In this document: positions 6,545-62,900 of the stretch, piece after piece
Layout: every line of letters begins with the position of its first letter
Position numbering within the stretch: position 1 is the stretch's first letter
Assembly (NCBI RefSeq): GCF_046119375.1
Contig: NW_027362761.1
Location: 890,382,001-890,446,000, forward strand
Direction of reading: 5' to 3'
Origin: Phyllobates terribilis
Lineage: Eukaryota
Length of the DNA: 64,000 nt
Position numbers and translations under genes: made by a program
Notes under the pieces: model-generated
Seen by the model: the letters and a program-made list of their open reading frames with translations, nothing else
What the model was told of the DNA's origin: nothing
The model's database searches: none

Positions 6545-7051
6545 AAGGTGTCACTCACCATGAGCTGCGGAAAAAAGTCTTTATTCAAGCAAAGACATCA
6601 GGAGAGGCGGTTCGCAGGTGTGTGCAGGAGAGTGCAAGGCAGGTCTACGGCCATTTCGCACTCGTAATGTGGTTCTATGGGTCCACGTATGCGAGGGCGT
6701 GCTGCTCCAACTTAAACTAAGGTGAGCAACATCCGCCCCTGCACCTGTTTCGGTGATAGTGATTATGCTAATGATAAAAACATATTACCTAAGGACTACA
6801 ATCACAATGAAAACAATTAAATAAATACAGACATATCCAACTTGTCATTGAGTCCAAGTGGACCCTGGGCATTACTTTTAAGGATTAATCTACCCTCTTT
6901 TATTAGTAACAATTGGTTATGGTTTCCCCCACGTCGGGGATATTCAACTCTTATTAAACCAGCAAAGCAAAGCAAATTCGGTTCTGCGTTATGGAATTCT
7001 CTCAAATGTTTAATTAATCGGGGGGCTCCTTTACATGTTGTAATTGATCTA
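6545..7051 (-). mobile_element. Penelope-like element 1, 3' portion (C-terminal half of GIY-YIG endonuclease plus downstream sequence)
   Basis: Minus frame reads RSITTCKGAPRLIKH...PRRGGNHNQLLLIKEGRLILKSNAQGPLGLNDKLDMSVFI*, like the C-terminus of the PLE at 52800-52969 (PRRGGDRVRLLKQREAYWI...PKGWNREYD). Confidence 0.8.
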
Positions 7052-9663
7052 TAAACCAGGGGTGGAGTCCTGAGGAGATAATTTGCATATTCCCACTGCA
7101 TTTTGGGGTAAGTGAAGAGTCTCCGCGAGCTCAAAGAACACTGGATTTTGGCTGTTGGAGCTGAAAAGAGGATATCGGTAAACCAGGGGTGGAGTCCTGA
7201 GGAGATAATTTGCATATTCCCACTGCATTTTGGGGTAAGTGAAGAGTCTCCGCGAGCTCAAAGAACACTGGATTTTGGCTGTTGGAGCTGAAAAGAGGAC
7301 ATCGGTAAACCAGGGGTGGAGTCCTGAGGAGATAATTTGCATATTCCCACTGCATTTTGGGGTAAGTGAAGAGTCTCCGCGAGCTCAAAGAACACTGGAT
7401 TTTGGCTGTTGGAGCTGAAAAGAGGACATCGGTAAACCAGGGGTGGAGTCCTGAGGAGATAATTTGCATATTCCCACTGCATTTTGGGGTAAGTGAAGAG
7501 TCTCCGCGAGCTCAAAGAACACTGGATTTTGGCTGTTGGAGCTGAAAAGAGGACATCGGTAAACCAGGGGTGGAGTCCTGAGGAGATAATTTGCATATTC
7601 CCACTGCATTTTGGGGTAAGTGAAGAGTCTCCGCGAGCTCAAAGAACACTGGATTTTGGCTGTTGGAGCTGAAAAGAGGACATCGGTAAACCAGGGGTGG
7701 AGTCCTGAGGAGATAATTTGCATATTCCCACTGCATTTTGGGGTAAGTGAAGAGTCTCCGCGAGCTCAAAGAACACTGGATTTTGGCTGTTGGAGCTGAA
7801 AAGAGGACATCGGTAAACCAGGGGTGGAGTCCTGAGGAGATAATTTGCATATTCCCACTGCATTTTGGGGTAAGTGAAGAGTCTCCGCGAGCTCAAAGAA
7901 CACTGGATTTTGGCTGTTGGAGCTGAAAAGAGGACATCGGTAAACCAGGGGTGGAGTCCTGAGGAGATAATTTGCATATTCCCACTGCATTTTGGGGTAA
8001 GTGAAGAGTCTCCGCGAGCTCAAAGAACACTGGATTTTGGCTGTTGGAGCTGAAAAGAGGACATCGGTAAACCAGGGGTGGAGTCCTGAGGAGATAATTT
8101 GCATATTCCCACTGCATTTTGGGGTAAGTGAAGAGTCTCCGCGAGCTCAAAGAACACTGGATTTTGGCTGTTGGAGCTGAAAAGAGGACATCGGTAAACC
8201 AGGGGTGGAGTCCTGAGGAGATAATTTGCATATTCCCACTGCATTTTGGGATAAGTGAAGAGTCTCCGCGAGCTCAAAGAACACTGGATTTTGGCTGTTG
8301 GAGCTGAAAAGAGGACATCGGTAAACCAGGGGTGGAGTCCTGAGGAGATAATTTGCATATTCCCACTGCATTTTGGGGTAAGTGAAGAGTCTCCGCGAGC
8401 TCAAAGAACACTGGATTTTGGCTGTTGGAGCTGAAAAGAGGACATCGGTAAACCAGGGGTGGAGTCCTGAGGAGATAATTTGCATATTCCCACTGCATTT
8501 TGGGGTAAGTGAAGAGTCTCCGCGAGCTCAAAGAACACTGGATTTTGGCTGTTGGAGCTGAAAAGAGGACATCGGTAAACCAGGGGTGGAGTCCTGAGGA
8601 GATAATTTGCATATTCCCACTGCATTTTGGGGTAAGTGAAGAGTCTCCGCGAGCTCAAAGAACACTGGATTTTGGCTGTTGGAGCTGAAAAGAGGACATC
8701 GGTAAACCAGGGGTGGAGTCCTGAGGAGATAATTTGCATATTCCCACTGCATTTTGGGGTAAGTGAAGAGTCTCCGCGAGCTCAAAGAACACTGGATTTT
8801 GGCTGTTGGAGCTGAAAAGAGGACATCGGTAAACCAGGGGTGGAGTCCTGAGGAGATAATTTGCATATTCCCACTGCATTTTGGGGTAAGTGAAGAGTCT
8901 CCGCGAGCTCAAAGAACACTGGATTTTGGCTGTTGGAGCTGAAAAGAGGACATCGGTAAACCAGGGGTGGAGTCCTGAGGAGATAATTTGCATATTCCCA
9001 CTGCATTTTGGGGTAAGTGAAGAGTCTCCGCGAGCTCAAAGAACACTGGATTTTGGCTGTTGGAGCTGAAAAGAGGACATCGGTAAACCAGGGGTGGAGT
9101 CCTGAGGAGATAATTTGCATATTCCCACTGCATTTTGGGGTAAGTGAAGAGTCTCCGCGAGCTCAAAGAACACTGGATTTTGGTTGTTGGAGCTGAAAAG
9201 AGGACATCGGTAAACCAGGGTTGGAGTCCTGAGGAGATAATTTGCATATTCCCACTGCATTTTGGGGTAAGTGAAGAGTCTCCGCGAGCTCAAAGAACAC
9301 TGGATTTTGGCTGTTGGAGCTGAAAAGAGGACATCGGTAAACCAGGGGTGGAGTCCTGAGGAGATAATTTGCATATTCCCACTGCATTTTGGGGTAAGTG
9401 AAGAGTCTCCGCGAGCTCAAAGAACACTGGATTTTGGCTGTTGGAGCTGAAAAGAGGACATCGGTAAACCAGGGGTGGAGTCCTGAGGAGATAATTTGCA
9501 TATTCCCACTGCATTTTGGGGTAAGTGAAGAGTCTCCGCGAGCTCAAAGAACACTGGATTTTGGCTGTTGGAGCTGAAAAGAGGACATCTGTAAACCAGG
9601 GGTGGAGTCCTGAGGAGATAATTTGCATATTCCCACTGCATTTTGGGGTAAGTGAAGAGTCTC
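7052..9663 (+). repeat. 127-bp monomer array, 20 complete units plus a 72-bp partial unit
   Basis: Exact 127-bp period; only five substitutions seen (~7172, 8251, 9184, ~9221, 9590). Confidence 0.98.
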
Positions 9664-9692
9664 ACTGTTTTTAGAACATTAACAATAAGAAC

Positions 9693-10655
9693 ATGGAAGA
9701 GTCCAGGAGCCATTTGGTGAGCTGCATATCCTGCTACATGTTCACAGACTTGCCAGTGGAAAAGCCAAACTTCACATCCCAGAAATGCAAGCTTGTGTCC
9801 CTGTTGGAGGAAAAGTTGCGAAATCTAGAAGAGAGGTTAACTACCTTGAAAATCATTAAGGAAGGTGAAGAGTTCTTAGACAGAGCAGAATTATCTCTTC
9901 ATGATTCAGAAAGAGAAGAAATTCGAACTGCACCTGACGAAACAGAGGAATGGAAGCATGTGACCCACAGAAGCAGGAGGATCGAGAGGCAGTCAGCACC
10001 CATACTGCTCAGGAACCAGTACCAGGCTCTCACGCAGGAGAACCATGAAGAAATACAGCAAAATAAGACTTTGCTAGCAATGAATAACCTTGTAAGCCCT
10101 CAGAATCCTCCTGGATGGAGAAAGAAGAATGTTGTGAAGAAAAAACGGAGAGTGGTGGTCATGGGGGATTCCCTGTTAAGAGGAACAGAGGCCGCTATCT
10201 GCAGACCAGACATAACCTCAAGAGAAATGTGCTGTCTTCCAGGAGCAAAAATTAAAGATGTGTCTAACAGGATATCAAGACTCTTCAGACCTACAGATCA
10301 CTACCCATTCCTGCTAATACATGTGGGGACAAATGACACCGCAAGAAAGGACCTGTAAACCATCTGCAGTGACTTTGAAGACTTAGGCAAGAAAGTGAAA
10401 GAATTGGGAGCGCAGGTGGTCTTCTCATCCATCCTCCCAGTGGATGGCCATGGAACAATGAGGTGGAATAAGATTCTACAGGTGAACAACTGGCTACGTC
10501 GATGGTGCCGTCAACAAGGATTTGGATTTCTGGATCACGGAATGAATTACCTATACGATGGACTACTTGCTAGAGATGGGGTGCACCTTACGAAGACTGG
10601 AAAACATGTATTTGGAAGTCGCCTTGCTACACTCATCAGAAGAGCTTTAAACTAG
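9693..10655 (+). pseudogene. CR1 ORF1 (N-terminal Cys motif, coiled coil, SGNH/GDSL esterase), ~320 aa with one in-frame TAA at 10356-10358
   Basis: SCISCYMF motif; VVVMGDSLLRG, LIHVGTND and DGVHL esterase blocks; the two track ORFs are in the same frame. Confidence 0.9.
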
Positions 10656-10777
10656 AACAATGTGGGAAGGGAAGCAAAAGGCCAGAAAAAGCCATACAGC
10701 TGACAAATACTATTGAGATCTCTGCTACTGGAAGTGGAAAGGAAGAACAAAGACAAAACAATTTAAATAATAAAAAT

Positions 10778-13572
10778 ATGGGAGGAAGAGAAACCAATCA
10801 CAAACTAAAATGTTTTTATACAAATGCACAAAGCATTGGCAACAAACAAGGAGAATTGGAACTACTAATGCAGGAAAAGGAATATGATGTCATTGGAGTC
10901 ACTGAAACTTGGTGGGACGATACACATGTTTGGAATAAAAGGCTAAAAGGATACAACTTATTTGCAAGAAACAGACTTGATAAACGAGGAGGAGGTGTTG
11001 CATTGTATGTTAGAAAAGCGTATATCTGCACAGAGATTGAATCTTCAGAGACTGGGAGTTCTGTGGAAACTGTTTGGGTAAGAATACAAGGAGAGAACAA
11101 CGGAAAGGACACCATTGTAGGCATTTACTACAGGCCACCTGGGCAAGCTGAAGATATGGATGAACTCTTTATGTATCAAATGACCAAGTTCTCCAAAAAA
11201 TATGACGTAGTGGTCATGGGAGATTTGAACTATCCAGACATTTGTTGGGAATCTCTCTCAAGTAAAACTAACAGGTCAAGCAAATTCTTATCGTCTCTTG
11301 CTGACAACTTTATCTTCCAAAAGGTAGGGGAGAAAACAAGGGGATCTGCTACTTTGGATCTAATCCTTATAAACAGGGAGGAAATGGTTGAGGAGGTAAA
11401 GGTGGCTGGGACCCTAGGAGGCAGCGATCATGCTATTATAGAATTTTGGATAACTAGAGGAGGAAGACATGTGAAGACTCAAACTTCAAGGTTAGATTTT
11501 AGAAAGGCAGATTTTAAGAGACTCAGAAAGAGAATAGGAGGGATCCAATGGCTGGATGTCCTTAAGGACAAAAATGTCCAGGAAGGATGGGAAATTTTTA
11601 AAAATGAGATTCTCAAAGCACAATCGCTAACAATCCTGAAAAGTAGGAAGAATGGGAAGCATTTAAGGAAACCAGGATGGATGAACACAGAACTTAAACA
11701 CATGCTAAAAAGAAAGAAAGAAATGTTTATTAAATGGAAAGAGGGAGGCATATCTAAAGAAGATTATAATGCAGTCTGCAGATCCTGCAGGGCACGTATC
11801 AGGTTAGCTAAAGCTGACAATGAATTAAGGCTTGCAAGAGATGTCAAAAGCAATAAAAAAGGATTTTGGGGGTATGTCAAAAGTAAAAGAAAAGAAAAGT
11901 CAAAGATGCTATAGGATTTTTACAGGATGAAAATGGAGAAATGGTAAGAGAGGATGTTGAGAAGGCCGAACTTTTTAATTCCTATTTTGCATCTGTTTTC
12001 TCTCAGAAAGAAAATGTAACATCAACTGATCTTCACTGTCCTTTTAAAGGAATAGAGGAATCCAAGTTATCTGTAAACAGAAAGATTGTGAGGGAATATT
12101 TAGCTAACATAAATGAGTTCAAGTCTCCAGGTCCAGATGAATTACACCCCAGAGTACTGAAGGAGATCGTAGAAGAAATTTTAGAACCACTCTCCATAAT
12201 CTTTGAAAATTCTTGGAGAACAGGAGAAGTCCCAGAAGACTGGAGAAGAGCAAATGTTCTTCCTATCTTCAAAAAGGGGAAGAAGGTGGACCCAGGGAAC
12301 TATAGGCCGGTGAGTCTGACTTCTATACCAGGAAAGATCTTTGAACAAATTATTAAACAACATGTATGTAAGTACATGGATAAGAATGAAGTGATTAACC
12401 AGAGTCAGCATGGGTTTGTAACTAACAAGTCATGTCAGACTAACTTAATTTCCTTCTATGACAGAATCACTGACTGGGTGGATCAGGGAAATGCTGTAGA
12501 TATAGTATATCTTGACTTCAGCAAAGCATTTGACAAAGTATCTCACACCATCCTTATTGAAAAAATGACCAAGTATGCAATGGACCAGGCAACTGTTAGG
12601 TGGATTCATAACTGGCTTAGTGATCGGACTCAAAGGGTGGTTGTAAATGGCTTCACATCCAGCTGGATGAATGTCTCAAGTGGGGTGCCACAGGGCTCCG
12701 TCCTGGGACCTGTATTGTTCAACATCTTTATCAATAATTTAGATGAAGGAATTGAGGGTAAACTGATTAAATTTGCTGATGACACAAAGCTAGGAGGGAT
12801 AGCTAATACTAGAGAAGAGAGAGAGAGGATTCCAAAAGACCTAAATAAACTGGAGCAGTGGGCAGCAACCAACAGAATGGTTTTTAACAGGGAAAAATGC
12901 AAAGTACTACATCTGGGCAATAAAAATGAAAAAAGCATATACAGAATGGGAGGAATAGAGCTAAGCAACAGTACATGTGAAAAAGACTTAGGTATACTAA
13001 TAGATCATAGACTGAACATGAGTCAACAGTGTGATGCAGCAGCAAAAAAGGCAAATACAATTCTGGGATGTATTAACAGAAGCATACAGTCTAGATCACG
13101 TGAAGTCATTATCGGTCTTTACTCCTCTTTGGTCAGACCTCATCTGGAATACTGTGTACAGTTTTGGGCACCACATTTTAAAAAAGACATAGACAAACTG
13201 GAGCAAGTTCAGAGAAGAGCGACCAGAATGGTGACTGGTCTGCAAACCATGTCCTATGAGGAACGGTTGCAGGATTTGGGAATGTTTAGCTTGCAAAAAA
13301 GAAGACTGAGAGGAGACTTAATAGCTGTCTACAAATATGTCAAGGGCTGTCACATTGTAGAAGGATCATCTTTATTCTCATTTGCACAAGGAAAGACTAG
13401 AAGCAATGGGATGAAACGAAATGGGAGGAGACACAGATTAGATATTAGAAAAAACTTTTTGACAGTTAGGGTGATTAATGAGTGGAATAGGCTGCCACGA
13501 GAGGTGGTGAGTTCCCCTTCAATGGACGTCTTCAAACAGAGGCTGGACAGACATCTGTCTGAGATGATCTAG
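10778..13572 (+). pseudogene. CR1 ORF2 (apurinic endonuclease plus reverse transcriptase) with one frameshift
   Basis: YTNAQS, GDLNYP and GGSDH APE motifs; GVPQGSVLGP and FADD RT motifs; a 5-bp AAAGA duplication at ~11886-11895 shifts the frame. Confidence 0.95.
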
Positions 13573-13656
13573 TGAATCCTGCTTTGAGCAGGGGGTTGGA
13601 CCAGATGACCCAGGAGGTCCCTTCCAACTCTACCATTCTATGATTCTATGATTCTA

Positions 13657-14425
13657 CAGTATTCACAAAATCTTACGAATAATGGTCTGATTGTCTTGTA
13701 AAATCAACAAGGACAAAACAGACCATATAGCACATGTGTCGTTTTACAAGATATAAAATCTTTAACGCACCATAAAACTGGACCTAACTGGAAGGAGGTG
13801 TCAGTCAGATGTTGAGGACAAAAAGAACATTGCCCACATTAAAAATTACCTAAAGGGATACTATTTTTAAACTAATTATCGTTCACTGATGCTATTTTGT
13901 TTTTAACCAGTAAATCTCTGAGATTTCTACTTCTTTTGTATGAAAAAAGGGTATTTGTCACTCAAGTCCTTGTCATTTTTAAGAAGATGCCAGTGTCTTC
14001 TTATTGCTGCATGGACCACATTGTCCATTTCTGTATGTTGAAAAGTGAGAGTAAATCTATCTAACCCCTCTTTGTTGAATGTTTTTTTGGGGACAATAAT
14101 TCTTTCTGTGTTTTTTGTTAACTTGTTCAATAGAGAACGGGGATATCCTCTCTCTAAAAAAGCATGTGTAAGTTCTGCCACCTGATTCTTAAATTTTGCT
14201 TCATTGTTAGTAATTCTCCTTACTCGCATCAGTTGGCTGTACGGGAGGCTTCTCCTAGTGTGGAATAGGTGGGCATTGTTGCAATGTAAAACTGAGTTAG
14301 TCGCTGTGGTTTTTTTTATGAATTTTAGTACATATCCTCCTGTCTATGATGTTGATCTTAACATCTCAAAACTCAAGCGAATCTCCTCCACAACTGGCTG
14401 TGAACTTCATGTTCTCTACAATTAA
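13657..14425 (-). mobile_element. Penelope-like element 1, upstream portion (RT C-terminus/thumb and N-terminal GIY-YIG), decayed and 5'-truncated
   Basis: Minus strand KTTATNSVLH...SLPYSQLMRVRR...FLERGYP...AIRRHWHLL and FISCKTTHVLYGLFCPC; several stops and deletions. Confidence 0.8.
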
Positions 14426-15159
14426 ATAGTTATACCATGCAAAATAGTTACTAAATAGCAATTAACTTACTCTACTTACTGTAGTATAATTTTTCAAATG
14501 TCCATTTATTTTGTTATGTGAGGCTTACAAATTTAGAAGCAAATTCTCATTTCTTACTAGTTTTTAAAGCCTACTTTTTTCAGAACAACTTCACTTTTTA
14601 AGTGACTTTGAGTTGCTTACTTATAGATCAAAAAACCTCCACATTAGAACCTATTTTAGAAACTGCTTCCCTACCTAATGTAAAGTGAAATCAAACATAA
14701 ACAATTACATTTTTTTCACTAAAATGTTGCTTAACCTTCAAGTATTTCAATTCCATAGGGGATTATAGGGGGAAATTGACCTTACAATTTATTGCAAAGT
14801 TTCTCTGAAAAGCTGCAATAGCCCATATCCTGTCAGAAGCTAATGTTTGGCCACACAGCAGGCCTTGAAAGCGAAGAAGCACAAATTTGGAGCACAAATT
14901 TGTCTAGAGTATATTGTGGGTGCCATGCCACATTTTTAGAAACACAAAGTATCAGAAAATCCACAAAACTGGCCCCATTTGTAAAACTATCAATGGATGT
15001 ATGAACATTTTAAATGCACAGGTGCTTCATAAAAATTTTACAACATAGAAAAGTTAAAAGGAAAAATGTAATTTCTCCTATTATAACATAAAGTGATGCA
15101 GTCCTAAGTTTTCCAGTTATATATTTTAGACTCCAACTAAGATGAATGTGATGGTTTAA

Positions 15160-18073
15160 CCCCTTCAGTACCTTTGACGTACATGTACATCAAAGGTAGT
15201 ATCCCTGCCTTTGATGTGGGCTCACTGGGCCCACATCTTTCCCGCACGTATGTCTGATTTAATCAGCCATCAAGTGCCTCTAACAGCCGTGGGCAGAGCA
15301 GTGTTCTGCCTGTGGCTGTTAACTACGGATGGGCCGATCCGTGGATGTTCGGGTCAATCGGGATTGGCAAAACTGGCTTGGGTACCAGAACGGTACCTGA
15401 ACTTGATCCCGAACCAGAATGGGGGGCCCAAACATGGTCCAAACCAATGGTTCCTGTGCTTTCATTCATGTGACAGAGTGGGAAACATTGGATCTGATTG
15501 GAGGTAACCTTAGGCACTCGGCACTCCGACACTCATTAGTCCGGCACTCGCCTTGCCTTCATGTGAACTGGTCGCTGTGAACAGAGGTGACATCAGTGAG
15601 GTTATCTCAGTTTACAGCGACTCTGCCCTCGTGAAAACCGGCCACTGTGAACTGAGATAACCTTACTGACGTCACCTCAGTTCATAGCAGCCAGGTCTCG
15701 GGGAGCACAGCGTGAGACCTGGCAGTGGCTGCTGCTTCAGTCTATGAAGCTGTGCTTTTTGAACGGAGTTCCATAGACTGGATGAAGAAGACTGGGATTG
15801 TCGTGGGACCTCCATATTATGGATTACGTTGGACCTTGTGGATTATTATTTTTTTTATTTATTTTTTAATAAATGAGGGAAAGAAGGAAATTGTTGGGGA
15901 GTTTCTTTTAAAATACTTTTTTCTGTGTGTTTTCTCTTTTTGCTTACTGGATTAGTAATGGGGGTGTCTTATAGATGCCTCTCTATTACTAACCTGTGGC
16001 CTTCATGTCAGCAGACATTACACAGCTGACATAAACCTCACAGTCTCATTACCCTGATTCCCATCTCTCCAGTGCAATAGGGAAGAGCTGAGGCGAAGTG
16101 CCATAATTGGCGAATCTAATGGATGCATCATTTCTGGGGTGGCTGTGGGCTTGTCCTATTAGGCTAGGAAGGGGACAATATCAATGTCCCTTCCCAGTTT
16201 ATTAATATCAGCCCCCAGCTGTCTGTTTTGCCTTAGCTGGTCATTAAAATAGGGGGAACCCACATTTTTTTTAGGGTTCCCCCATTTTTAATAACCAGCA
16301 AAGCAAAGCAAACAGCTGGAGGCTGATATTAATAGATTGAGAAGGTCCATGGATATTGACTCCTTCCCAGAATAAGACCAGCTCACAGCTGTCTGCTTTC
16401 CCTTGGCTGGTTATTAAAAATAGGGGTGAACCCAAGTCCTTTTTCTGATTTACTTATTAGTATTTTTCATTAATTTATTAGTAATAAAGAAATTAGTAAA
16501 CTGATGTGGGGTCCCCCCTATTTTTGATAACCAGCCAAGATAAAGCAGACAGCTGGGGGCTGGTATTCTCAGGCTGGGAATGTCCATGAATATTTAGCCC
16601 TCCCCAGCCTAAAAATAGCAGCCCGCAGCCACCCAAAAATAGGCATATGCATTAGATGCGCCAATTCTGGAACTTTGCGTGGCTCTTCCCACTGGCCCTG
16701 GTGTGTTGGCAAGCAGGGTAATATTTTGGGGTTGAAGTCAGCTGTGTAATGTCCGTTGACATCAAGCCCAGAGGTTAGTAATGGGGCAGTGTTTATCAGA
16801 CACCCCCATTATTAACCCTGTAAGTGAGTAGTTAAAAAAACACAGACATGCAGAAAAAAATACCTTATTTGAATAAAGACTCCCCCACTCCCTCGTTTAC
16901 CCATTTATTAATTAAAAATAAAATCCAGGCAGTTCCGACGGTAATCCAATAGTGAAATGTCCCACGACGCCCATCGAATCCTATGGAGTCTCGTTCTGAA
17001 AAAGTTCTCAGAAGGAGACTTCATAGTTCACTTACGGTCAGCGACAGGCACGGATTTTCTCATAGCCCTGCCTGCCGCTGATCATGAGTAACCTTATTGA
17101 GCCTCACTCTAAGAATGTTCTGATAACCAGCCAAGATAAAGCAGACAGCTGAGAGCTGCAGCCCGCAGCTGTCTGCTTTATCAGTGCTTGTTATCAAAAA
17201 TAGAGGCAACCCCACATATTTTTTTGCGTTTATTTTATGTTTTTTATACACTTTGCCAGCCAATCACAGCCATGTCAATACTTGGTATGGCTGTGATGGG
17301 GCCAGAAGTTCCCACACCGTAAAAGCTTGTTGATTGGCTATGCGTCATTCATCCCTGCCCATTGGTGCCCCAGTGTTGAAGCCCGGCTATGTATAGCACA
17401 GGAAATTGGAAAATTGCAGCTCCAAAGGGGACTATTAAACACAGTAAAAAGTAAAAAAAATGTTCTTCAAATCACCCCCTTTTGCCCCAATAAAAATAAA
17501 AAAACATATTTGGTATTGCTGCACTCTTAAAAGCCTAATCTCTCAAACGGCAATCAAAATATTGGACCTACCCTCAAAGGGTATCAATAAAAACATCAGC
17601 TCAGGGTGCACAAAATAAGCCCTCACCCAGCCCCACGTCCCAAAAAAAGAAAACGTTATGGATCTCGGAAAATGGATACAAAAACAAAAATTTTTTTTTC
17701 ACAAATTTCCAAATTATTTTTCATCACCTAAATAAAACAAACTATACATGTTTGGTATCTGCATACTCATACTGAGCTAGGGAATCATATTGCCAGGTCA
17801 GTTTTACCATATAGTGAACATGGTAAATAAAAAACCCAAAAAACAATTGTGGAATTGCACTTTTTTTGAAATTTCAATGCACTTGGAATTTTTTCCCATT
17901 TTCCAGTACACTATATGGTAAAATTAATGGTGTTGTTCAAAAGTACATCTCGTCCCGCAAAAAACAAGTCCTCGTACGGCTATATGGCCAGAAAAAAAAA
18001 TGTTACGACTCTGGGAAGAAGGGGAGGAAAAAAACAAAACGAAAAAACAGAAAATTGACGGGTAGTGAAGGGG
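15160..18073. mobile_element. Non-autonomous piggyBac-like element with nested, internally palindromic repeats
   Basis: TTAA|CCCCTTCA...TGAAGGGG|TTAA; large imperfect inverted repeat at ~15950-16830; no transposase ORF. Confidence 0.65.
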
Positions 18074-19522
18074 TTAATATTTATAAACAATTTTTTAGAA
18101 GGTTATTTACCTCTTAATGCAATGTGATGCAAACATAAGATTTATATTAGTAAGGGATGTTTACAGTATAAAATCTTGCTAGAAACCAGTCAAGCAGGAA
18201 AATTTCAATGGAGAATACTGTAGAATATTTCTGGGTAAATAAAGAAGCAATGTTAGGATGCATTTACATTGGTTTACTGACTGTCATATAAAAGACCTCT
18301 GATCGGGTACATGCATGCCAATCAACAGTTGTTTAACATCTTGTTTAAACAGGCCAAATGCAGTTACATGGATACAGAATGATCATTAATACAAGTATTG
18401 TGTGCACATAAAATTATTGTTCTCAGAATCACATGCCTTGTTTCCACAGAATGATGTGCTGCCAAAAATGATGATTTTCAATCAAATTTAAAAATCATTT
18501 CACTTAACGAACAAGCTTTTAAATGAGCTGTCATTACATATTTTAGGTATAAGCATGCACCTAAATCAGTATTAATAGAAACAGATTCACTTTTACAAAA
18601 ATATCCCATTTTAGTTACTTTAAAAAGATACATGATCATTTTTAAAGAGAACTTAACTTGTCAGCCGATTCATGCTGCCCAAACCAAGGAATTTCATGTT
18701 TCACTTTTGCTCATTTTAATTATTTTTTCTTCTAAAATAGCAGATGATTAACCTACAAAGTTTGTACATAGCCACCCAAAACCCCAGAGGACACCGAAAA
18801 AAAACATTTATAATTTGTATTAAACAGTAAATTAAAACTAAAATGATTATTATTAGTTACAGCTCAGAGAATCCATTCAGAGAACACTGATCCACAGGCC
18901 ATATCAGTAGTCCGTGGCCCCCAGACTGACGTCATGAGGACCACCTCTTACATGCTGGAATCCCAAGCGCTTCTTCTGTTTTTTTTGGCCCATATCTTTG
19001 TTGCAGCCTGATACATGTCTGATGATGCACTGGGCCACTTAATCAGAGGAGGTAGCAGGGATTCTAGCAGATAGGCAGCGATTCCCAGAGTGTGAGGTCC
19101 AGTGGCCAGGGACTATTAATGTGGTTACTGGACCAGGATTCAGGGTTCACCGAAACAATTAACTCATCTCTACTGGCCAGGCTCGTTTGGCCCTTCATTT
19201 CAAGCAGATTACATACTGTATAAAATATTACAGATGCAAAGAATTATTCTAAGTGACTTACGAAAGTGTGCATAAATAAAAGGTGAAAAAATTGCATAAA
19301 CAGAGTATGCAAATCTAGTACCAGATCTATACAGATCTATGCAGCTAAACTCTCTTAAAGGCAATATTTCTACAAGACAATAATGCTGTACTTGCTGCAT
19401 CTGGATTTTTTTTCTCTATTGGAGTTAAAAAGAATGCAACAGAAACAAAATTGTTATGTCTTAGCATGAAATTGAAGGCATATAACAATAAAGTCCCTTC
19501 ACCTCAATGGGAGTTCCATTAA

Positions 19523-19697
19523 AGGGAATGTGTTATCAGAAAATGACAAACTGTTAAAATCAGGTTATTGTGTTAATTGTAATTTTACAACTATTTTGGT
19601 ATATGTACTGTATATTTCAAAATAGTTTTAAAATTACAATTAACACAAATGCCTGATTTGAACAGTTTGTCATTTTCTGATAACATAATATCTAACT
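19523..19697. mobile_element. Fold-back MITE (T2/Kolobok-like left end)
   Basis: TTAA|AGGGAA start; arms GTTATCAGAAAATGACAAACTGTT and AACAGTTTGTCATTTTCTGATAAC. Confidence 0.65.
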
Positions 19698-20305
19698 TCT
19701 GATAACAGTGTAATATATATTACATTGTGTATAAAAAAACGAAATCTTACAATCAGGGCCGGCGTCAGGGCGGGGCAGACTAGGCATCTTGGGGGCCCTC
19801 AATGTCTACAGCAGAAGCCTCACTGATAGAGAGAGATTGGTTGAGGACCTGTAGTGACATCACGATCATGTGACCTGTGATGTGACCGTGATGTCACCAC
19901 AGGCCTTGCACTCTGGGGAACTTCAGAACCTTGGGTGAGGGCCTGGCATTAAGAGAGGAGGAGCATGCAGTGAAGGATAGGAACACTGGCCACTGAATCT
20001 CCTCAATCAGAGGGATAGAAGCACATATTGGCCAGTGCTCCTGTCCTCCTGCACAGAGCCTGAGGGGAGGGAGAGCCAGAGATACAGCACCTACTGAGCT
20101 GATGAGCTGAAAGGATAAGAAGTATGAAGTTGAAATAGTGCCAATGACCAGCGTAAAAATTGTAAGCATGGCTGGTTTTAGACAAAGTGGGACCCTAGGC
20201 TCGCACATTGCGCCATCACACTTAAACATTTTGGCTGTATTTACGTGCACTGAGTACAGGCCCATTAAACGAGCGTGATCGACAATATTGAAGTCATTCG
20301 GTGCT

Positions 20306-21321
20306 TGTGACGCGCCCCCTGGGCCGTGGGGTACTCGTTAGCCGGGCCGGTCGATGCTGGGGGATATCACAGTGGTGGTGACCCAGACGTGACCCAGGGC
20401 GGTCAATAAAAGGGGTTTTAAAGAAAAGGGAATAGAGTTTCTATATATAATGTTCGTGACGCCACCTGTGGTATGCGGCTATATGGAGCCGCCGCTGCGG
20501 TGCGCATCCTCTGTAGCTGATGATGATGGAGCAGAGTTGGTTCAGCTCTCCACAGGCAGAGCTTAGCTCCAGGGCAGGAAATGGTGACGTTATAGATGTT
20601 GCTGTGCAGTGTAGTGCAGGGGATGGCGCAGTTAATAATCAGTCCACAACTTAATGGCGGTTTCCTCTTATCTTTACTTGTGGTGGTTAGGCAGACCGGG
20701 GCACGGGTACTAGCTGGTAGTAGAGGTCCGGGCAGCCTGGAAGCAAGTTGGGAATCCACCTCGCCAGGTGAAGTTGGAGGCCTTCCCTTTGCGCTAATCT
20801 CTTTGGCCCTGCTGCTTATAGCTGTGCTGTGGCCCTCGTCCCTGAGTAAAACGTCTTTGTGCTCACCTGTATGGCAGGCAGCTTGGGCCTTCCTGGAGTG
20901 TCGCTCCCACATGGCGGTGATGGGCCCTATGTGCTGCTGAGCTTCCGGGCGTCTGATGGGGCCAGGAGACCTGCAGTCGCCAGCCCTCCGGTTTCTGCTG
21001 CTGGGCTTTCAGTGCTCCACAACCTCAGACTCCGGTGTCTGGTTCTTCTACGCTCCTCTCTGGGGTGAACTGCCATGCAGCTCCACTCCCCAGGTCTTTC
21101 CTCGTCGCTGTCCTGTCTTCAACTCCTCTCAACTCACTCTAACTAACCCCGCCTTAGATTCCAGTTGCTAAGGGGAGGAGCTCCCCTTGCTGGTCTGGAG
21201 CCAGGAAAGTGTTGCATGCTAGTATACCTGACTAGGGGACCTCTGCTTGCTTCCAGGCATGGCATCACCCCTTGTGAGGGAGGCAATGCCACTGTGGCAA
21301 CCGGACTCCTGGGGTGCCACA
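20306..21321. mobile_element. Probable solo LTR (~1 kb)
   Basis: TGTGAC...GCCACA termini, GC-rich, CTTG at 20304-20307 and 21322-21325 (left boundary ambiguous by 2 bp). Confidence 0.6.
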
Positions 21322-50736: not shown

Positions 50737-52969
50737 ATATTTCCTCCAAAACCCTAAGCATTGCCCAACTGTCTGTATTGCAAAAAGGTCTCTCCTTCTG
50801 TCCAGTCAGTCGATTTAACACCTTTAATCTCGACATGGAACTTCAGCGGTTCTATCGCTCTTTAAGACTTAAGACACGCTTTGCCAAACCTGAGCTTACA
50901 GGCATTAGCAATTCCACCACTACTTCTAACCAAGATGCAGCTATTACATCCAACAGTCTAGGTCTTTATACCAAAAGCTCTTACAGGCCTCCCCTGGGCT
51001 CTCATGCCCTAGAAACCTTTATTGGTTTTGTAGACACGGCCTTTAAGGAATTATGGTCCAAGATTGATAGAGGTAAACTGCACTTTGAACCCAATCTTTC
51101 TCCCCTCGACCAACAAGGGCTCAATAGCCTGAAGGAGGATAAGAGTAATATTATAAAACCAGCAGACAGAGGGGGCGCAATTGTTATCATGGACAAAAGT
51201 CAATACATCAAAGAGGTGGAAAGTCAACTCAATGACACTACCACTTATCATCAGTTACCCCAGGACCCTACCTCCCAAATCAGTAGCTCGATATCTTCGG
51301 TCATCAACCGATTTGTTACAGCAGGCACTATTGACATTAAAACCGGCGAGTTTCTCACCAAGAAACACCCCATAACACCTGTCATTTACGTTTTGCCCAA
51401 AATCCACAAGAGCTTGATTGAACCTCCAGGACGACCAATAGTGGCCTCCACCGAGTCACTACTTTCCCCTCTATCTATTTTCTTGGAGAAAATACTTACA
51501 CCCCTAGTACAAAAAAGCCCATCCTTCCTACTAGACACAGGATCCTTTCTCACAACATTGACCAATCTAAAACAGGTCCCTCCAGGAGCCATTTTGGTCT
51601 CCTTCGATGTTAAGAATCTCTATACATCCATATCCCACGATCACGGCATTAACACAGCACATGCCCTTCTAACAGAATCACTCATTGACCCGCAAATTGT
51701 TGATCTTTCCATCGAATTAATTACCTTGGTACTCACCAAGAACTACTTCTTATTCCAGGACACTTATTATCTACAAGTTAAAGGCACTGCCATGGGCTCC
51801 AACGTGGCTCCCCCGTATGTAAATTGCTATATGGCCACATTTGAAAGCCAGGTAGTCTATTCCAAATCCTTGTTCCAAGAACATTCCATCGTTTGGAAAG
51901 GGTACATTGACGATATCTTTTGCATATGGGGAAGCCCGTTGGAGACTTTTGAAGCCTTCCATGTTTTCCTGAATTCCGCTTGGCCCGACCTGGGCTTCAC
52001 AATGACTCATGACTATCAGAAAGTGAGCTTTCTTGACACAATGGTGATGAAAGACGAGTATGGGTGTCTTACAACAGACCTCTATACTTACCCTACGGAC
52101 CGGAATGGTCTATTACACTTTACCAGCAATCACCCAAGGTCCATTAAGAAATCCATACCCAAATCCCAATTACAAACAGTTGAACGGATCGTGACCAACG
52201 AATCCATTCATAACCAGAGACTACAAGAAATGGGCTCTAAATTTAGCGAACGGGGATACTCGTCCTCTATATTACAACCACAGACAACGACAAACAAAAT
52301 CGCATTCCCTTTGTCCACACATTCCACCCCTACGCTTATATCCTACACAAAACCATTCGGAAACACTGGAACATATTACGGACAGGGTATCCAAATATTA
52401 CTTCCTTTCAACGGCCGTTCATGCCTTGCTTCAAGAGAGCCCCCAATCTTAGGGATTCTCTGGTATGTGCAGACATTGGCAAAACAAACCAGGGACCGAA
52501 ACAACGATTCCTTCAGAATCCTAAATTGGGAACTTTCCCTTGCCTGCAATGCCAGCAAAATAACAACGTTTTAAAGGGCAATATTGTTTATCATCCCCAC
52601 ACAGGCAAGAAATACAATATTAAAAACTACTTTACCTGCAGCAGTGCATTTGTCATATACCTCATTAAATGTTCATGTGGTCTAATCTACATAGGCAAAA
52701 CTACTCAGCCTGTCAATGATAGAATCTCCAAACACAAATCTACGATTCGGTGTAAGAATCTGCTACTACCTATTCCCCATCACTTCATTTCAGCAGGTCA
52801 TAACATATCCCAACTAAAATACCAGGTTTTGGAACTGGTACTGCCACCACGCCGGGGGGGCGACCGGGTCCGCCTCCTGAAACAGAGGGAGGCCTATTGG
52901 ATACATGAAATGGAATCCCTATCACCTAAGGGATGGAATAGGGAATATGATTTGCTTTCCTTTCTGTAG
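50499..52969 (+). pseudogene. PLE RT plus GIY-YIG endonuclease ORF with a frameshift near 52270
   Basis: LNISSK...QKGLSFCP, KPADRGG, YVLPKIHK, FDVKNLYTSI, GTAMGS, YIDD, FLD, RGY; then PCLQCQ linker and VIYLIKCSCGLIYIGKT. Confidence 0.92.
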
Positions 52970-53084
52970 GGCTTTATTTTTGTTCTGTAATGCCTTAGTC
53001 CCTATTACTCTATGTTGCAAATTATGTGAATTATGTAGCAGTTTTATACACTATTATCAATGCCACTGTTGACAGAACTTTGTC

Positions 53085-59984: not shown

Positions 59985-62900
59985 TGGAAATGTAGCAGAA
60001 GGTACAAGAAAGCTGAGGAACTACCGAGAACCAGCTGACAGTACTGGAACCCGGATGGGTAGCAGAAGGTACAAGAGCCAATGGAACTGCCGAAGACCAG
60101 CTGACGGTACTGGAACTCGGTTACTAAGCAGGAGGTACCTGTGCCAGAAAGCACTACCAAGGACCAGCAGACGTTGGTGGAACTTGGATACCGAGAAGGA
60201 GGCACCTAATCGAACAAATTATTAAACAACATGTATGTAAGTACCTGGATAAGAATGAAGTGATTAACCAGAGTCAGCATGGGTTTATAACTAACAAGTC
60301 ATGTCAGACTAACTTAATTTCCTTCTATGACAGAATCACTGACTGGGTGGATCAGGGAAATGCTGTAGATATAGTATATCTTGACTTCAGCAAAGCATTT
60401 GACAAAGTATCTCACACCATCCTTATTGAAAAAATGACCAAGTATGCAATGGACCAGGCAACTGTTAGGTGGATTCATAACTGGCTTAGTGATCGGACTC
60501 AAAGGGTGATTGTAAATGGCTTCACATCCAGCTGGATGAATGTCTCAAGTGGGGTACCACAGGGCTCCGTCCTGGGACCTGTATTGTTCAACATCTTTAT
60601 CAATGATTTAGATGAAGGAATTGAGGGTAAACTGATTAAATTTGCTGATGACACAAAGCTAGGAGGGATAGCTAATACTAGAGAAGAGAGAGAGAGGATT
60701 CAAAAAGACCTAAATAAACTGGAGCAGTGGGCAGCAACCAACAGAATGGTTTTTAACAGGGAAAAATGCAAAGTACTACATCTGGGCAATAAAAATGAAA
60801 AAAGCATATACAGAATGGGAGGAATAGAGCTAAGCAACAGTACATGTGAAAAAGACTTAGGTATACTAATAGATCATAGACTGAACATGAGTCAACAGTG
60901 TGATGCAGCAGCAAAAAAGGCAAATACAATTCTGGGATGTATTAACAGAAGCATACAGTCTAGATCACGTGAAGTCATTATTGGTCTTTACTCCTCTTTG
61001 GTCAGACCTCATCTGGAATACTGTGTACAGTTTTGGGCACCACATTTTAAAAAAGACATAGACAAACTGGAGCAAGTTCAGAGAAGAGCGACCAGAATGG
61101 TGACTGGTCTGCAAACCATGTCCTATGAGGAACGGTTGCAGGATTTGGGAATGTTTAGCTTGCAAAAAAGAAGACTGAGAGGAGACTTAATAGCTGTCTA
61201 CAAATATGTCAAGGGCTGTCACATTGTAGAAGGATCATCTTTATTCTCATTTGCACAAGGAAAGACTAGAAGCAATGGGATGAAACTAAATGGGAGGAGA
61301 CACAGATTAGATATTAGAAAAAACTTTTTGACAGTTAGGGTGATTAATGAGTGGAACAGGCTGCCACGAGAGGTGGTGAGTTCCCCTTCAATGGACGTCT
61401 TCAAACAGAGGCTGGACAGACATCTGTCTGAGATGATTTAGTGAATCCTGCTTTGAGCAGGGGGTTGGACCAGATGACCCAGGAGGTCCCTTCCAACTCT
61501 ACCATTCTATGATTCTATGATTCTAATCCAAAGGCACTGCCGAGAACCAGCTGACGGTACTGGAACCCGGATGGGTAGCAGAAGGTACCCATGTAAAAAA
61601 AAGTTCAAGGCCGCGAGCCGCCCACAGTTACCAAAACCCACAGTCCTACAGGGGGTGCTTGTCCTATTGGCACTATGGAACCAGCCTTCATTGCCTGATC
61701 CCGCAGCCCACATAGGAGTCACCTAAACTGCAGGCACCATAGAGTCGGCTAACCCGACCGCAACACGACAGGACAACGCATTGGAGGCAAAGTGACGTTG
61801 ACACTACCCGGAAACAGCTGGCGTGCTGGAACCAGACTGGGCAGGAGGGAGTACCCGTGCCAAAGTCAATGCCGAGAACCAGCTGACGGTACTGGAACCC
61901 GGATGGGTAGTAGAAGGTACAAGAGCAAATGGAACTACCGAGGACCAGCTGACGGTACTGGAACCCGGATGGGTAGCAGAAGGTACAAGAGCCAATGGAA
62001 CTGCCGAAGACCAGCTGACGGTACTGGAACTCGGTTACTAAGCAGGAGGTACCTGTGCCAGAAAGCACTACCAAGGACCAGCAGACGTTGGTGGAACTTG
62101 GATACCGAGAAGGAGGCACCTAATCCAAAGGCACTGCCGAGAACCAGCTGACGGTACTGGAACCCGGATGGGTAGCAGAAGGTACCCATGTAAAAAAAAG
62201 TTCAAGGCCGCGAGCCGCCCACAGTTACCAAAACCCACAGTCCTACAGGGGGTGCTTGTCCTATTGGCACTATGGAACCAGCCTTCATTGCCTGATCCCG
62301 CAGCCCACATAGGAGTCACCTAAACTGCAGGCACCATAGAGTCGGCTAACCCGACCGCAACACGACAGGACAACGCATTGGAGGCAAAGTGACGTTGACA
62401 CTACCCGGAAACAGCTGGCGTGCTGGAACCAGACTGGGCAGGAGGGAGTACCGGTGCCAAAGTCAATGCCGAGAACCAGCTGACGGTACTGGAACCCGGA
62501 TGGGTAGTAGAAGGTACAAGAGCAAATGGAACTACCGAGGACCAGCTGACGGTACTGGAACCCGGATGGGTAGCAGAAGGTACAAGAGCCAATGGAACTG
62601 CCGAAGACCAGCTGACGGTACTGGAACTCGGTTACTAAGCAGGAGGTACCTGCCAGAAAGCACTACCAAGGACCAGCAGACGTTGGTGGAACTTGGATAC
62701 CGAGAAGGAGGCACCTAATCCAAAGGCACTGCCGAGAACCAGCTGACGGTACTGGAACCCGGATGGGTAGCAGAAGGTACCCATGTAAAAAAAAGTTCAA
62801 GGCCGCGAGCCGGCCGCAGTTACCAAAACCCACAGTCCTACAGGGGGTGCTTGTCCTATTGGCACTATGGAACCAGCCTTCATTGCCAGATCCCGCAGCC

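What the first reader, a model, noticed from the sequence alone, without database searches (positions are those of the whole stretch)
7052..9692. CR1 LINE whose 5' end is a 2.6-kb array of 127-bp monomers, resembling a rodent-L1-style modular promoter
Seen: 20 complete plus one partial 127-bp units with only five substitutions, ending 29 bp before the ORF1 ATG, and lying inside the insertion boundary (the flanks rejoin a split PLE). Known: mouse L1 uses tandem ~200-bp 5' monomers as an additive internal promoter, which lets an element starting within a monomer stay expressible. I know of no such architecture described for CR1. Inference: this is a CR1 lineage that independently evolved a copy-number-tunable promoter array that travels with, or regrows on, the element.
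Basis: partly seen in the sequence, partly recalled or inferred. Interest (0 to 1): 0.9.

Follow-up and report, generated by a model that had tools for sequence, protein, structure and literature searches.

The report
CR1 retrotransposon with tandem-monomer 5' end
A young CR1 jumping gene in a poison-frog genome carries about 20 near-identical 127-bp repeats as its leader, a layout known from mouse L1; related frog and lizard CR1 copies have it too, but whether the repeats drive transcription is untested.

Summary
Positions 7052-9663 hold 20 full and one 72-bp partial 127-bp unit with five substitutions, ending 29 bp before the ORF1 ATG of a CR1 LINE.

The array lies inside the insertion. Removing 7052-13656 restores an open GIY-YIG reading frame of a minus-strand Penelope-like element.

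It is a family trait, not a local oddity:
- An intact Dendrobates tinctorius CR1 (92% identical body) has 2.3 homologous 128-bp monomers in front of ORF1. It too lies inside its insertion, within a 36-bp satellite.
- Contig word depth suggests roughly three monomers per ORF1 5' end genome-wide, so 20.6 looks like an outlier.
- The scan's first readers noted the same arrays on many other pieces of this genome. I could not check those notes.

Three Zootoca vivipara CR1 copies carry unrelated 183-bp and 122-bp modular 5' arrays. The architecture therefore recurs within CR1.

Only the octamer ATTTGCAT and a 25-nt block are conserved between the frog subfamilies. The GTAAGT "donor" is not. The 2.6-kb leader has no sense-strand ATG.

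Promoter activity, start sites, and whether the 20 units arrived with the insertion or grew afterwards remain untested. This copy is dead: an ORF1 nonsense mutation and an ORF2 frameshift.

Verdict: a new variant of a known kind (monomeric LINE 5' UTR), apparently undescribed for vertebrate CR1.

The parts
7052..9663 (+). 5' array: 20 full and one 72-bp partial 127-bp monomer, 99.8% identical. No ATG on the sense strand.
7081..7088 (+). Octamer ATTTGCAT at monomer positions 30-37, shown here for unit 1 and repeated in every unit. It is the only named factor motif conserved in the D. tinctorius monomers.
9664..9692 (+). Non-repeated 29-bp tether between the last (partial) monomer and the ORF1 ATG. 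T-rich, contains TTTTTAG.
9693..10655 (+). CR1 ORF1 (320 codons, SGNH/GDSL esterase type) with a private nonsense codon TAA at 10356-10358. Almost all other contig depth at this place reads GAA.
10778..13572 (+). CR1 ORF2 (AP endonuclease and reverse transcriptase), broken by a 5-nt AAAAG duplication within 11885-11899.
13573..13656 (+). CR1 3' UTR ending in the (ATTCTATG)n microsatellite at 13635-13656. No poly(A).
6817..7051 (-). Left flank: C-terminal part of the GIY-YIG domain of the interrupted Penelope-like element.
13657..14229 (-). Right flank: upstream part of the same Penelope-like ORF. The reading frame continues across the 13657/7051 join.
60212..61525 (+). Second, 5'-truncated copy of the same CR1 family, 99.2% identical over 1314 bp. 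Shows the family is young.

Best explanation
The 127-bp array is the 5' untranslated leader of a young CR1 family of dendrobatid frogs. It is copied with the element through its RNA. It most likely acts as a repeated internal promoter/enhancer module in the manner of mouse L1 monomers.

Shown:
- The array lies within the retrotransposed unit in two independent insertions.
- The monomers are homologous between two subfamilies whose bodies differ by 8%.
- Copy number differs between copies (2.3 against 20.6).
- The leader is free of upstream AUGs on the sense strand only.
- An octamer and a 25-nt block are conserved in each monomer.
- Three independent 5' ends fall within 6 nt of the same monomer position.

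Inferred:
- RNA polymerase II starts at or near TAAACC/CAGGGG of a monomer.
- Each monomer carries its own factor sites, with the octamer as a candidate POU site.
- Copies truncated within the array during the inefficient CR1 reverse transcription would therefore keep a working promoter.
- Monomer number drifts by unequal exchange, replication slippage or template switching.

This particular copy is dead and is an outlier in length. Whether its 20 units arrived with the insertion or grew afterwards is open.
For: - Inside the insertion, window copy: the flanks rejoin in frame in a PLE GIY-YIG domain.
- Inside the insertion, second copy: L001, an intact D. tinctorius CR1 (ORF1 320 aa, ORF2 910 aa), has 2.3 x 128-bp monomers at 9661-9960. 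They are 86% identical to the window's and lie 40 bp before the ATG. The whole element sits in register inside a 36-bp satellite.
- Conserved monomer features: ATTTGCAT, AAGTGAAGAGTCTCCGCGAGCTCAA and AGCTGAAAAGAGGA. CpG observed/expected is 0.44-0.68 against 0.23 in the element body.
- No sense ATG in 2641 nt (55 expected), against 62 antisense. The same holds in L001 and in the unrelated lizard modules; the per-unit shuffle probabilities are 0.056, 0.025 and 0.14, and the product of about 2e-4 is my own arithmetic.
- 5' ends: the window starts at TAAACCAGG. A contig of run X25 reads ATGTTAAAATTGT|TAAACCAGGGGAGG. L001 starts at CAGGGG. The chance of this coincidence is about 0.0075.
- DNA contigs hold monomer and ORF1 words at similar, very high depth, about 2.7 monomer equivalents per ORF1 5' end.
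- Three Zootoca CR1 copies on three chromosomes have 0.76-2.5 kb modular 5' arrays.
- Precise GT-AG removal of the 122-nt module in some lizard units implies passage of the array through spliced sense RNA.
- Mouse L1 precedent for monomers, tether, a mean of about 3 and a maximum of 50 monomers: PMC7778262, PMC5381506.
Against: - There is no direct evidence of transcription starts or promoter activity. The RNA-labelled runs exist only as contigs without strand and may contain DNA. The raw RNA runs came from another organism and laid no reads.
- The longest array sits on a dead copy, while the intact copy has only 2.3 units.
- The array's internal divergence (5 substitutions in 2612 bp) is somewhat below the roughly 10 expected from the body's private changes (P about 0.065). 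This fits later growth or homogenisation.
- GT-box, GATA and GTAAGT motifs are not conserved between subfamilies, and there is no TATA, Inr or YY1 core.
- Family-wide linkage rests on two sequenced copies plus unverified scan notes.
- The array length is not confirmed by long reads.
Confidence: 0.6

Rival explanations
1. Neutral minisatellite in the leader. The 5' UTR of this CR1 family happens to contain a tandem duplication that expands and contracts by slippage or unequal exchange. The array has no promoter role, and the 20.6 units here are a local post-insertion expansion on a dead copy.
For: The units are 99.8% identical, with only singleton changes. Array divergence is lower than expected from the body. 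This copy is non-functional, whereas the intact L001 copy has 2.3 units. The depth ratio suggests about 3 units is typical.
Against: The monomer architecture persisted through 8% body and 14% monomer divergence, with conserved blocks. The sense strand is depleted of ATG. The 5' ends coincide in phase. An unrelated lizard CR1 family evolved the same layout. A functionless repeat would not be expected to recur and persist, though this argument is indirect.
Confidence: 0.25
2. Spliced leader. Each monomer's GTAAGT is a splice donor facing the single TTTTTAG acceptor 18 nt before the ATG. The array would then be removed from the translated mRNA and kept only in the unspliced transposition template.
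For: GTAAGT occurs at position 57 of each window monomer, and TTTTTAG lies in the tether. Acceptor-like TTTTTAAG is also present in L001. Lizard CR1 arrays do contain a precisely removable GT-AG module. Human L1 splicing and SpIREs are known (PMC5860796).
Against: The donor is not conserved: L001 monomers read ATAAGT, as does window unit 10. No monomer-to-tether joint appears in contigs of three RNA-labelled runs. The last partial monomer ends 16 nt past the putative donor, so the monomer-tether junction is not a splice product.
Confidence: 0.08
3. Assembly artefact. The array exists, but its length at this locus is inflated by the assembler.
For: Near-identical tandem units are error-prone in assembly. 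No spanning reads could be examined, because only short-read contigs were available.
Against: Five singleton variants mark five different units, which pure collapse or expansion artefacts would not create. 2.6 kb is well within the span of long reads. The scan's notes report arrays of similar size elsewhere in the genome (unverified).
Confidence: 0.05
4. Pre-existing satellite. A 5'-truncated CR1 landed next to a 127-bp satellite that has nothing to do with it.
For: None beyond the juxtaposition.
Against: Array and CR1 together interrupt one PLE codon, and the flanks rejoin in frame. The same monomer-ORF1 linkage occurs inside another insertion in L001.
Confidence: 0.02

Closest known systems
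Mouse and rat L1 monomeric 5' UTR (A, Tf and Gf monomers plus tether)
   Same: Head-to-tail monomers at the 5' end inside the element. A non-repeated tether leads to ORF1. Monomer number varies between copies, with a low mean and rare very long arrays: mouse mean about 3, maximum 50 (PMC7778262). Here the values are 2.3 and 20.6, with about 2.7 by depth. Monomers differ between subfamilies while the ORFs stay conserved (PMC5381506).
   Different: A different LINE clade: CR1, with an esterase ORF1, a microsatellite tail and no poly(A). Monomers are 127 bp rather than about 200 or 650 bp. The tether is 29-40 bp rather than about 250 bp. There is no YY1 core and only weak CpG enrichment. Promoter activity is proven for L1 and untested here. 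The 5' ends seen so far share one phase.
Tribolium castaneum CR1-3_TCa with TCAST satellite in its 5' UTR (PMC3411249)
   Same: A CR1-clade element whose 5' UTR consists of satellite-type monomer sequence, proposed to serve as its promoter and to spread by retrotransposition.
   Different: Only 1.2 monomers of a 360-bp major centromeric satellite, interpreted as capture from the satellite. No variable multi-copy array and no tether architecture. An insect, not a vertebrate.
Zootoca vivipara CR1 family
   Same: CR1 with an esterase ORF1, 67% nucleotide identity to the frog element over 3.5 kb. Its 5' arrays of 0.76-2.5 kb are 97.5-100% identical to the reference units, vary between copies and are followed by a tether and ORF1.
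   Different: The modules are unrelated in sequence (183 bp and 122 bp) and lack an octamer. The 122-nt module behaves as a GT-AG intron that is present or precisely absent. The tether is 123 bp.
Human L1 splicing and SpIREs (PMC5860796)
   Same: LINE 5' UTRs can contain working splice sites, and spliced RNAs are reverse-transcribed into new copies. The lizard arrays show this footprint.
   Different: In the frog family no spliced junction was seen, and the putative donor is not conserved.

Membership tests
CR1 clade of non-LTR retrotransposons | ORF2 encoding an AP-type endonuclease followed by a reverse transcriptase | tested here: met
   Pfam Exo_endo_phos (7.6e-17), Exo_endo_phos_2 and RVT_1 (3.6e-35).
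CR1 clade of non-LTR retrotransposons | ORF1 with an SGNH/GDSL esterase domain | tested here: met
   The ORF1 N-terminal piece is 87% identical to D. tinctorius P0001, which carries PF13472, as do most of the 69 homologues. The 221-aa piece before the stop has no Pfam hit of its own.
CR1 clade of non-LTR retrotransposons | 3' UTR ending in an (ATTCTRTG)n octamer microsatellite, with no poly(A) tail | tested here: met
   ...CCATTCTATGATTCTATGATTCTA ends at 13656. The same tail is present in L001. The feature is described in PMC4316615.
CR1 clade of non-LTR retrotransposons | Insertion without a long target-site duplication; frequent 5' truncation | tested here: met
   The flanks rejoin with no duplicated bases and the frame is kept. 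A 5'-truncated sister copy lies at 60212-61525.
L1-type monomeric 5' UTR promoter (functional class, not phylogenetic) | Tandem monomers at the 5' end inside the element's boundaries, joined to ORF1 by a unique tether | tested here: met
   for the window; for L001.
L1-type monomeric 5' UTR promoter (functional class, not phylogenetic) | Monomer number varies among copies of the family | tested here: met
   20.6 units (window) against 2.3 (L001). The depth ratio is about 2.7. The scan's notes list arrays of 342-9601 bp, not verified.
L1-type monomeric 5' UTR promoter (functional class, not phylogenetic) | Monomers alone drive transcription, and activity rises with number | not testable with these tools
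   Needs reporter assays.
L1-type monomeric 5' UTR promoter (functional class, not phylogenetic) | Transcription starts inside monomers | tested here: inconclusive
   Three 5' ends lie within 6 nt of one monomer position, which hints at a defined start. There are no stranded reads or CAGE data, and the raw RNA runs laid 0 reads.
L1-type monomeric 5' UTR promoter (functional class, not phylogenetic) | CpG-island character and a YY1 site, as in mouse T and G monomers | tested here: not met
   CpG observed/expected is 0.44 (window) and 0.68 (L001). There is no AAGATGG core. This is a difference in detail, not in architecture.

The most novel reading that the evidence does not exclude
Tandem-monomer internal promoters are a convergent solution that non-L1 LINEs also reach. 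A frog CR1 and a lizard CR1 would each have built variable arrays of self-sufficient promoter modules upstream of a short tether. In the frog these modules centre on a conserved octamer that could tie expression to germline or early-embryo POU factors. The arrays would buffer the severe 5' truncation of CR1 and tune expression by copy number. In the lizard, each module would even carry its own intron.
Probability: 0.45. Interest if true: 0.75.

Novelty: new variant of a known kind. Interest (0 to 1): 0.62.

Why it matters
CR1 is the dominant LINE of birds, reptiles and many amphibians. Yet its 5' UTR and promoter are poorly known, because almost all copies are 5'-truncated (PMC4316615). The specialised CR1 surveys I could read do not mention 5' arrays or promoters (PMC4316615, PMC11303007).

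A young family with intact copies and a modular leader offers a tractable system for finding the CR1 promoter. Two unrelated monomer systems, in a frog and a lizard, alongside rodent L1, turn the question "why do LINEs evolve monomeric promoters?" into a comparative one.

There is also a practical point. Such arrays inflate element length beyond the 6-kb cut-offs used to call full-length CR1s. They may therefore be annotated as free satellites.

Tried and rejected
- Raw RNA-seq runs X21-X23 laid 0 reads because they come from another organism. There is therefore no strand, start-site or splice information.
- Read laying refuses stretches with more than 12 repeat copies. The 5' junction and the array length could not be examined, and both calls are now used.
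- Exact-protein look-ups found nothing on record for the window's ORF1 piece or for the antisense 112-aa array ORF.
- The ORF2 homology search was swamped by bird and turtle CR1s and returned no dendrobatid proteins. No further frog copies could be fetched.
- The Ranitomeya imitator loci (P0003, P0004) returned no DNA because the files are too large.
- Two metagenome scans with conserved monomer blocks found nothing.
- Rfam gave no family match for the monomers. There are no inverted repeats at the array ends.
- Single CR1 copies of Chelydra, Alligator and Calypte have no 5' tandem array. The trait is not universal in CR1.
- The GT-box, GATA and Staf reading of the monomer is rejected as a conserved feature, because only the octamer survives in L001.
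- The tether alignment across taxa was too weak to claim homology.
- The antisense 112-aa ORFs are a by-product of the repeat: 62 antisense ATGs and a period that is not a multiple of 3.

Full report
**1.

Tandem Repeats Finder reports one array at 7052-9663: period 127, 20.6 copies, 99% matches, no indels. Cutting the array into units gives 20 complete copies and a final 72-bp piece. Exactly five substitutions are present, each a singleton in a different unit: 1, 10, 17, 18 and 20. A 41-nt monomer probe matches 21 times, against 0 expected in shuffles, and nowhere else in the 64-kb window. The array ends at 9663 and the first long ORF starts with ATG at 9693, so 29 unique bases lie between them.

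**2. What follows the array is a CR1 LINE**

- ORF2 (10778-13572) carries AP-endonuclease and reverse-transcriptase domains.
- The ORF1 piece is 87% identical to a D. tinctorius protein with an SGNH/GDSL esterase domain, and most of its 69 homologues carry that domain.
- The element ends in ATTCTATGATTCTATGATTCTA without poly(A). This is the CR1 hallmark described in PMC4316615.

This copy is dead. ORF1 has TAA at 10356, where almost all other DNA and RNA-library contig depth reads G, giving GAA. ORF2 carries a 5-nt AAAAG duplication relative to L001.

The family is young. A 5'-truncated copy at 60212-61525 is 99.2% identical.

The host is a dendrobatid frog, judged by the best hits. The species is not given to me.

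**3. The array is inside the insertion**

On the minus strand the flanks encode a Penelope-like element. Deleting exactly 7052-13656 produces an open frame reading ...FYKTIRPLFVRFCEYC|RSITTCKGAPRLIKH...PRRGGNHNQLLLIKEGRLILKSNAQGPLGLND.

A paralogous PLE at about 52095-53017 has 50 residues between KT and PRRGG. The rejoined flank has 51, and the two are in register across the join. A satellite already present at the target is therefore excluded.

**4. It is a family trait**

The closest ORF1 protein, P0001, maps to a D. tinctorius scaffold (locus L001).

- That CR1 is 92% identical to the window's over 4.3 kb.
- It has both ORFs intact: 320 aa and 910 aa.
- It is preceded by 2.3 copies of a 128-bp unit at 9661-9960. 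The unit is about 86% identical to the window's monomer and ends 40 bp before the ATG.
- Element plus monomers sit inside a 36-bp satellite whose register continues on both sides...GGTCGTCAT | CR1 | ATCACATCC....

So monomers are carried by retrotransposition in a second, independent insertion.

In Logan contigs of a DNA run, monomer words and ORF1 words both occur at very high summed depth. A rough conversion gives about 2.7 monomer equivalents per ORF1 5' end. The tool warns that depth is not copy number. If this figure is roughly right, 2-3 units is typical and 20.6 is an outlier. That resembles mouse L1, with a mean near 3 and a maximum of 50 (PMC7778262).

The scan's first readers noted the same 127-bp arrays in front of CR1 ORF1 on many other pieces of this genome, spanning 342 to 2550 bp and once 9601 bp. 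I could not read those loci, so these notes are leads, not evidence.

**5. Anatomy of the monomer**

Between the window and L001 monomers the conserved blocks are GAGGAGAT-ATTTGCATATTCC (the octamer), AAGTGAAGAGTCTCCGCGAGCTCAA and AGCTGAAAAGAGGA.

The GGGGTGG, GATA and GTAAGT motifs of the window's monomer are absent from L001. CpG observed/expected is 0.44-0.68 in monomers against 0.23 in the body. There is no TATA, Inr or YY1 core.

The 2641-nt leader has no ATG on the sense strand, where 55 are expected, and 62 on the antisense strand. L001's leader and both lizard modules also lack sense ATGs. The per-unit shuffle probabilities are 0.056, 0.025 and 0.14. This fits selection on a scanned mRNA leader.

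Three independent 5' ends fall within 6 nt of one monomer position:
- the window (|TAAACCAGG);
- a contig end in run X25 (ATGTTAAAATTGT|TAAACCAGGGGAGG);
- L001 (|CAGGGG).

The chance of this is about 0.0075. It hints at a defined start site near the monomer boundary, with the octamer about 30 nt downstream of it. That position is about 97 nt upstream of the next monomer's equivalent start.

**6. RNA evidence is uninformative**

Three RNA-labelled runs hold monomer words at depths equal to or above ORF1; for X15 and X16 the ratios are 6.4 and 6.7, against 2.7 in DNA. These runs exist only as unstranded contigs and may contain DNA. No splice joints were seen. The only raw RNA runs offered belong to another organism and laid no reads.

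**7. Did the 20 units arrive with the insertion, or grow later?**

The body's private changes predict about 10 substitutions in 2612 bp, and 5 are seen (P about 0.065). This is compatible with arrival as a long array. It is also compatible with some later growth or homogenisation. All five changes are singletons, so no recent local duplication has copied a mutated unit. The question stays open.

**8. The architecture recurs in CR1**

A Zootoca vivipara CR1 is 67% identical in nucleotides to the frog element over 3.5 kb. It has a 2.5-kb array in front of ORF1. Two further copies on other chromosomes have 0.76-kb and 0.84-kb arrays built from the same 183-bp and 122-bp modules, followed by the same tether.

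The 122-nt module is bounded AAG|GTGAGC...TTTTCTAG|G. Where it is missing, the junction is exactly GGAGCAGAAG|GGCTGC. The module is present at 4 of 11, 3 of 3 and 1 of 3 unit junctions in the three copies. I read this as an intron in each monomer that was spliced from some units before reverse transcription. This resembles human SpIREs (PMC5860796). It implies that such arrays are transcribed in sense and inherited through RNA.

Single CR1 copies from a turtle, an alligator and a hummingbird have no 5' array.

**9. Comparison with what is known**

The layout matches the bipartite monomer-plus-tether 5' UTR of mouse and rat L1 (PMC5381506, PMC7778262). However, it belongs to a different LINE clade, the monomer sequence is unrelated, the tether is much shorter, and there is no CpG island or YY1 site.

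A beetle CR1 (CR1-3_TCa) with 1.2 TCAST satellite monomers in its 5' UTR, proposed as a promoter, is published (PMC3411249).

Full-text searches found no description of multi-copy 5' monomer arrays in vertebrate CR1. The two specialised CR1 surveys I read do not mention them. Repbase/Dfam entries and subscription journals were not searchable.

**10. Verdict**

The array belongs to the element and to its family, and it travels with it. The promoter reading is the most economical but is untested; I put it near 0.5-0.6. The main rival is a functionless, unstable leader repeat.

This is a new variant of a known kind and was found repeatedly in this genome by the scan. The added result is that a lizard CR1 family has evolved the same design.

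Noticed in passing
L003:1335-3877, L005:4105-4867, L006:4041-4877 (Zootoca vivipara, three chromosomes): A lizard CR1 family has modular 5' arrays of 183-bp units. Some units are followed by a 122-nt module bounded GT...AG with a pyrimidine tract. Where the module is absent, the junction is exactly the spliced product. This looks like an intron in each promoter monomer, partly spliced before retrotransposition.
   Followed up: partly
window:11941-13569 (+), protein P0084: The RT half of ORF2 is 81% identical in amino acids to a Salvator merianae (tegu) protein. This compares with 67-70% to lacertid and anole proteins and 60-62% to turtle and bird CR1s. That is unusually high for frog against lizard. 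Horizontal transfer among Neotropical hosts is a possibility I did not test.
   Followed up: no
window:52095-53017 (+): A second, diverged Penelope-like element with a readable GIY-YIG domain (IYIGKT...PRRGGD...REAYWI). It served here as the reference for the split PLE.
   Followed up: partly
window:60212-61525 (+): A 5'-truncated copy of the same CR1 family, 99.2% identical to 12343-13656. It indicates very recent activity.
   Followed up: partly
table 5c (runs X1 and X14), against L003:3878-3925: Other frog subfamilies or species join monomer and tether at different monomer positions (6, 126, about 45, 72). One tether variant, GCGCGCCGGTTTTGAAGCTTTTT, resembles the lizard tether GCGCGCATTTTGACCCATCTTTTT. 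This may be a shared ancestral 5' UTR core.
   Followed up: no
L001:752-9396 and 13954-20963 (D. tinctorius): The locus around the intact CR1 is packed with minisatellites of 33-37 bp and 86 bp (arrays of 0.3-4.6 kb). The CR1 is inserted in register in a 36-bp array, and gene callers read that array as 524-556-aa ORFs.
   Followed up: no
window:13617-13695 (-): A sub-threshold Rfam match of the CR1 3' UTR hairpin region to mir-3524 (24.6 bits against a gathering score of 99; E = 0.08). This is probably chance, or a sign that the miRNA family derives from CR1.
   Followed up: no
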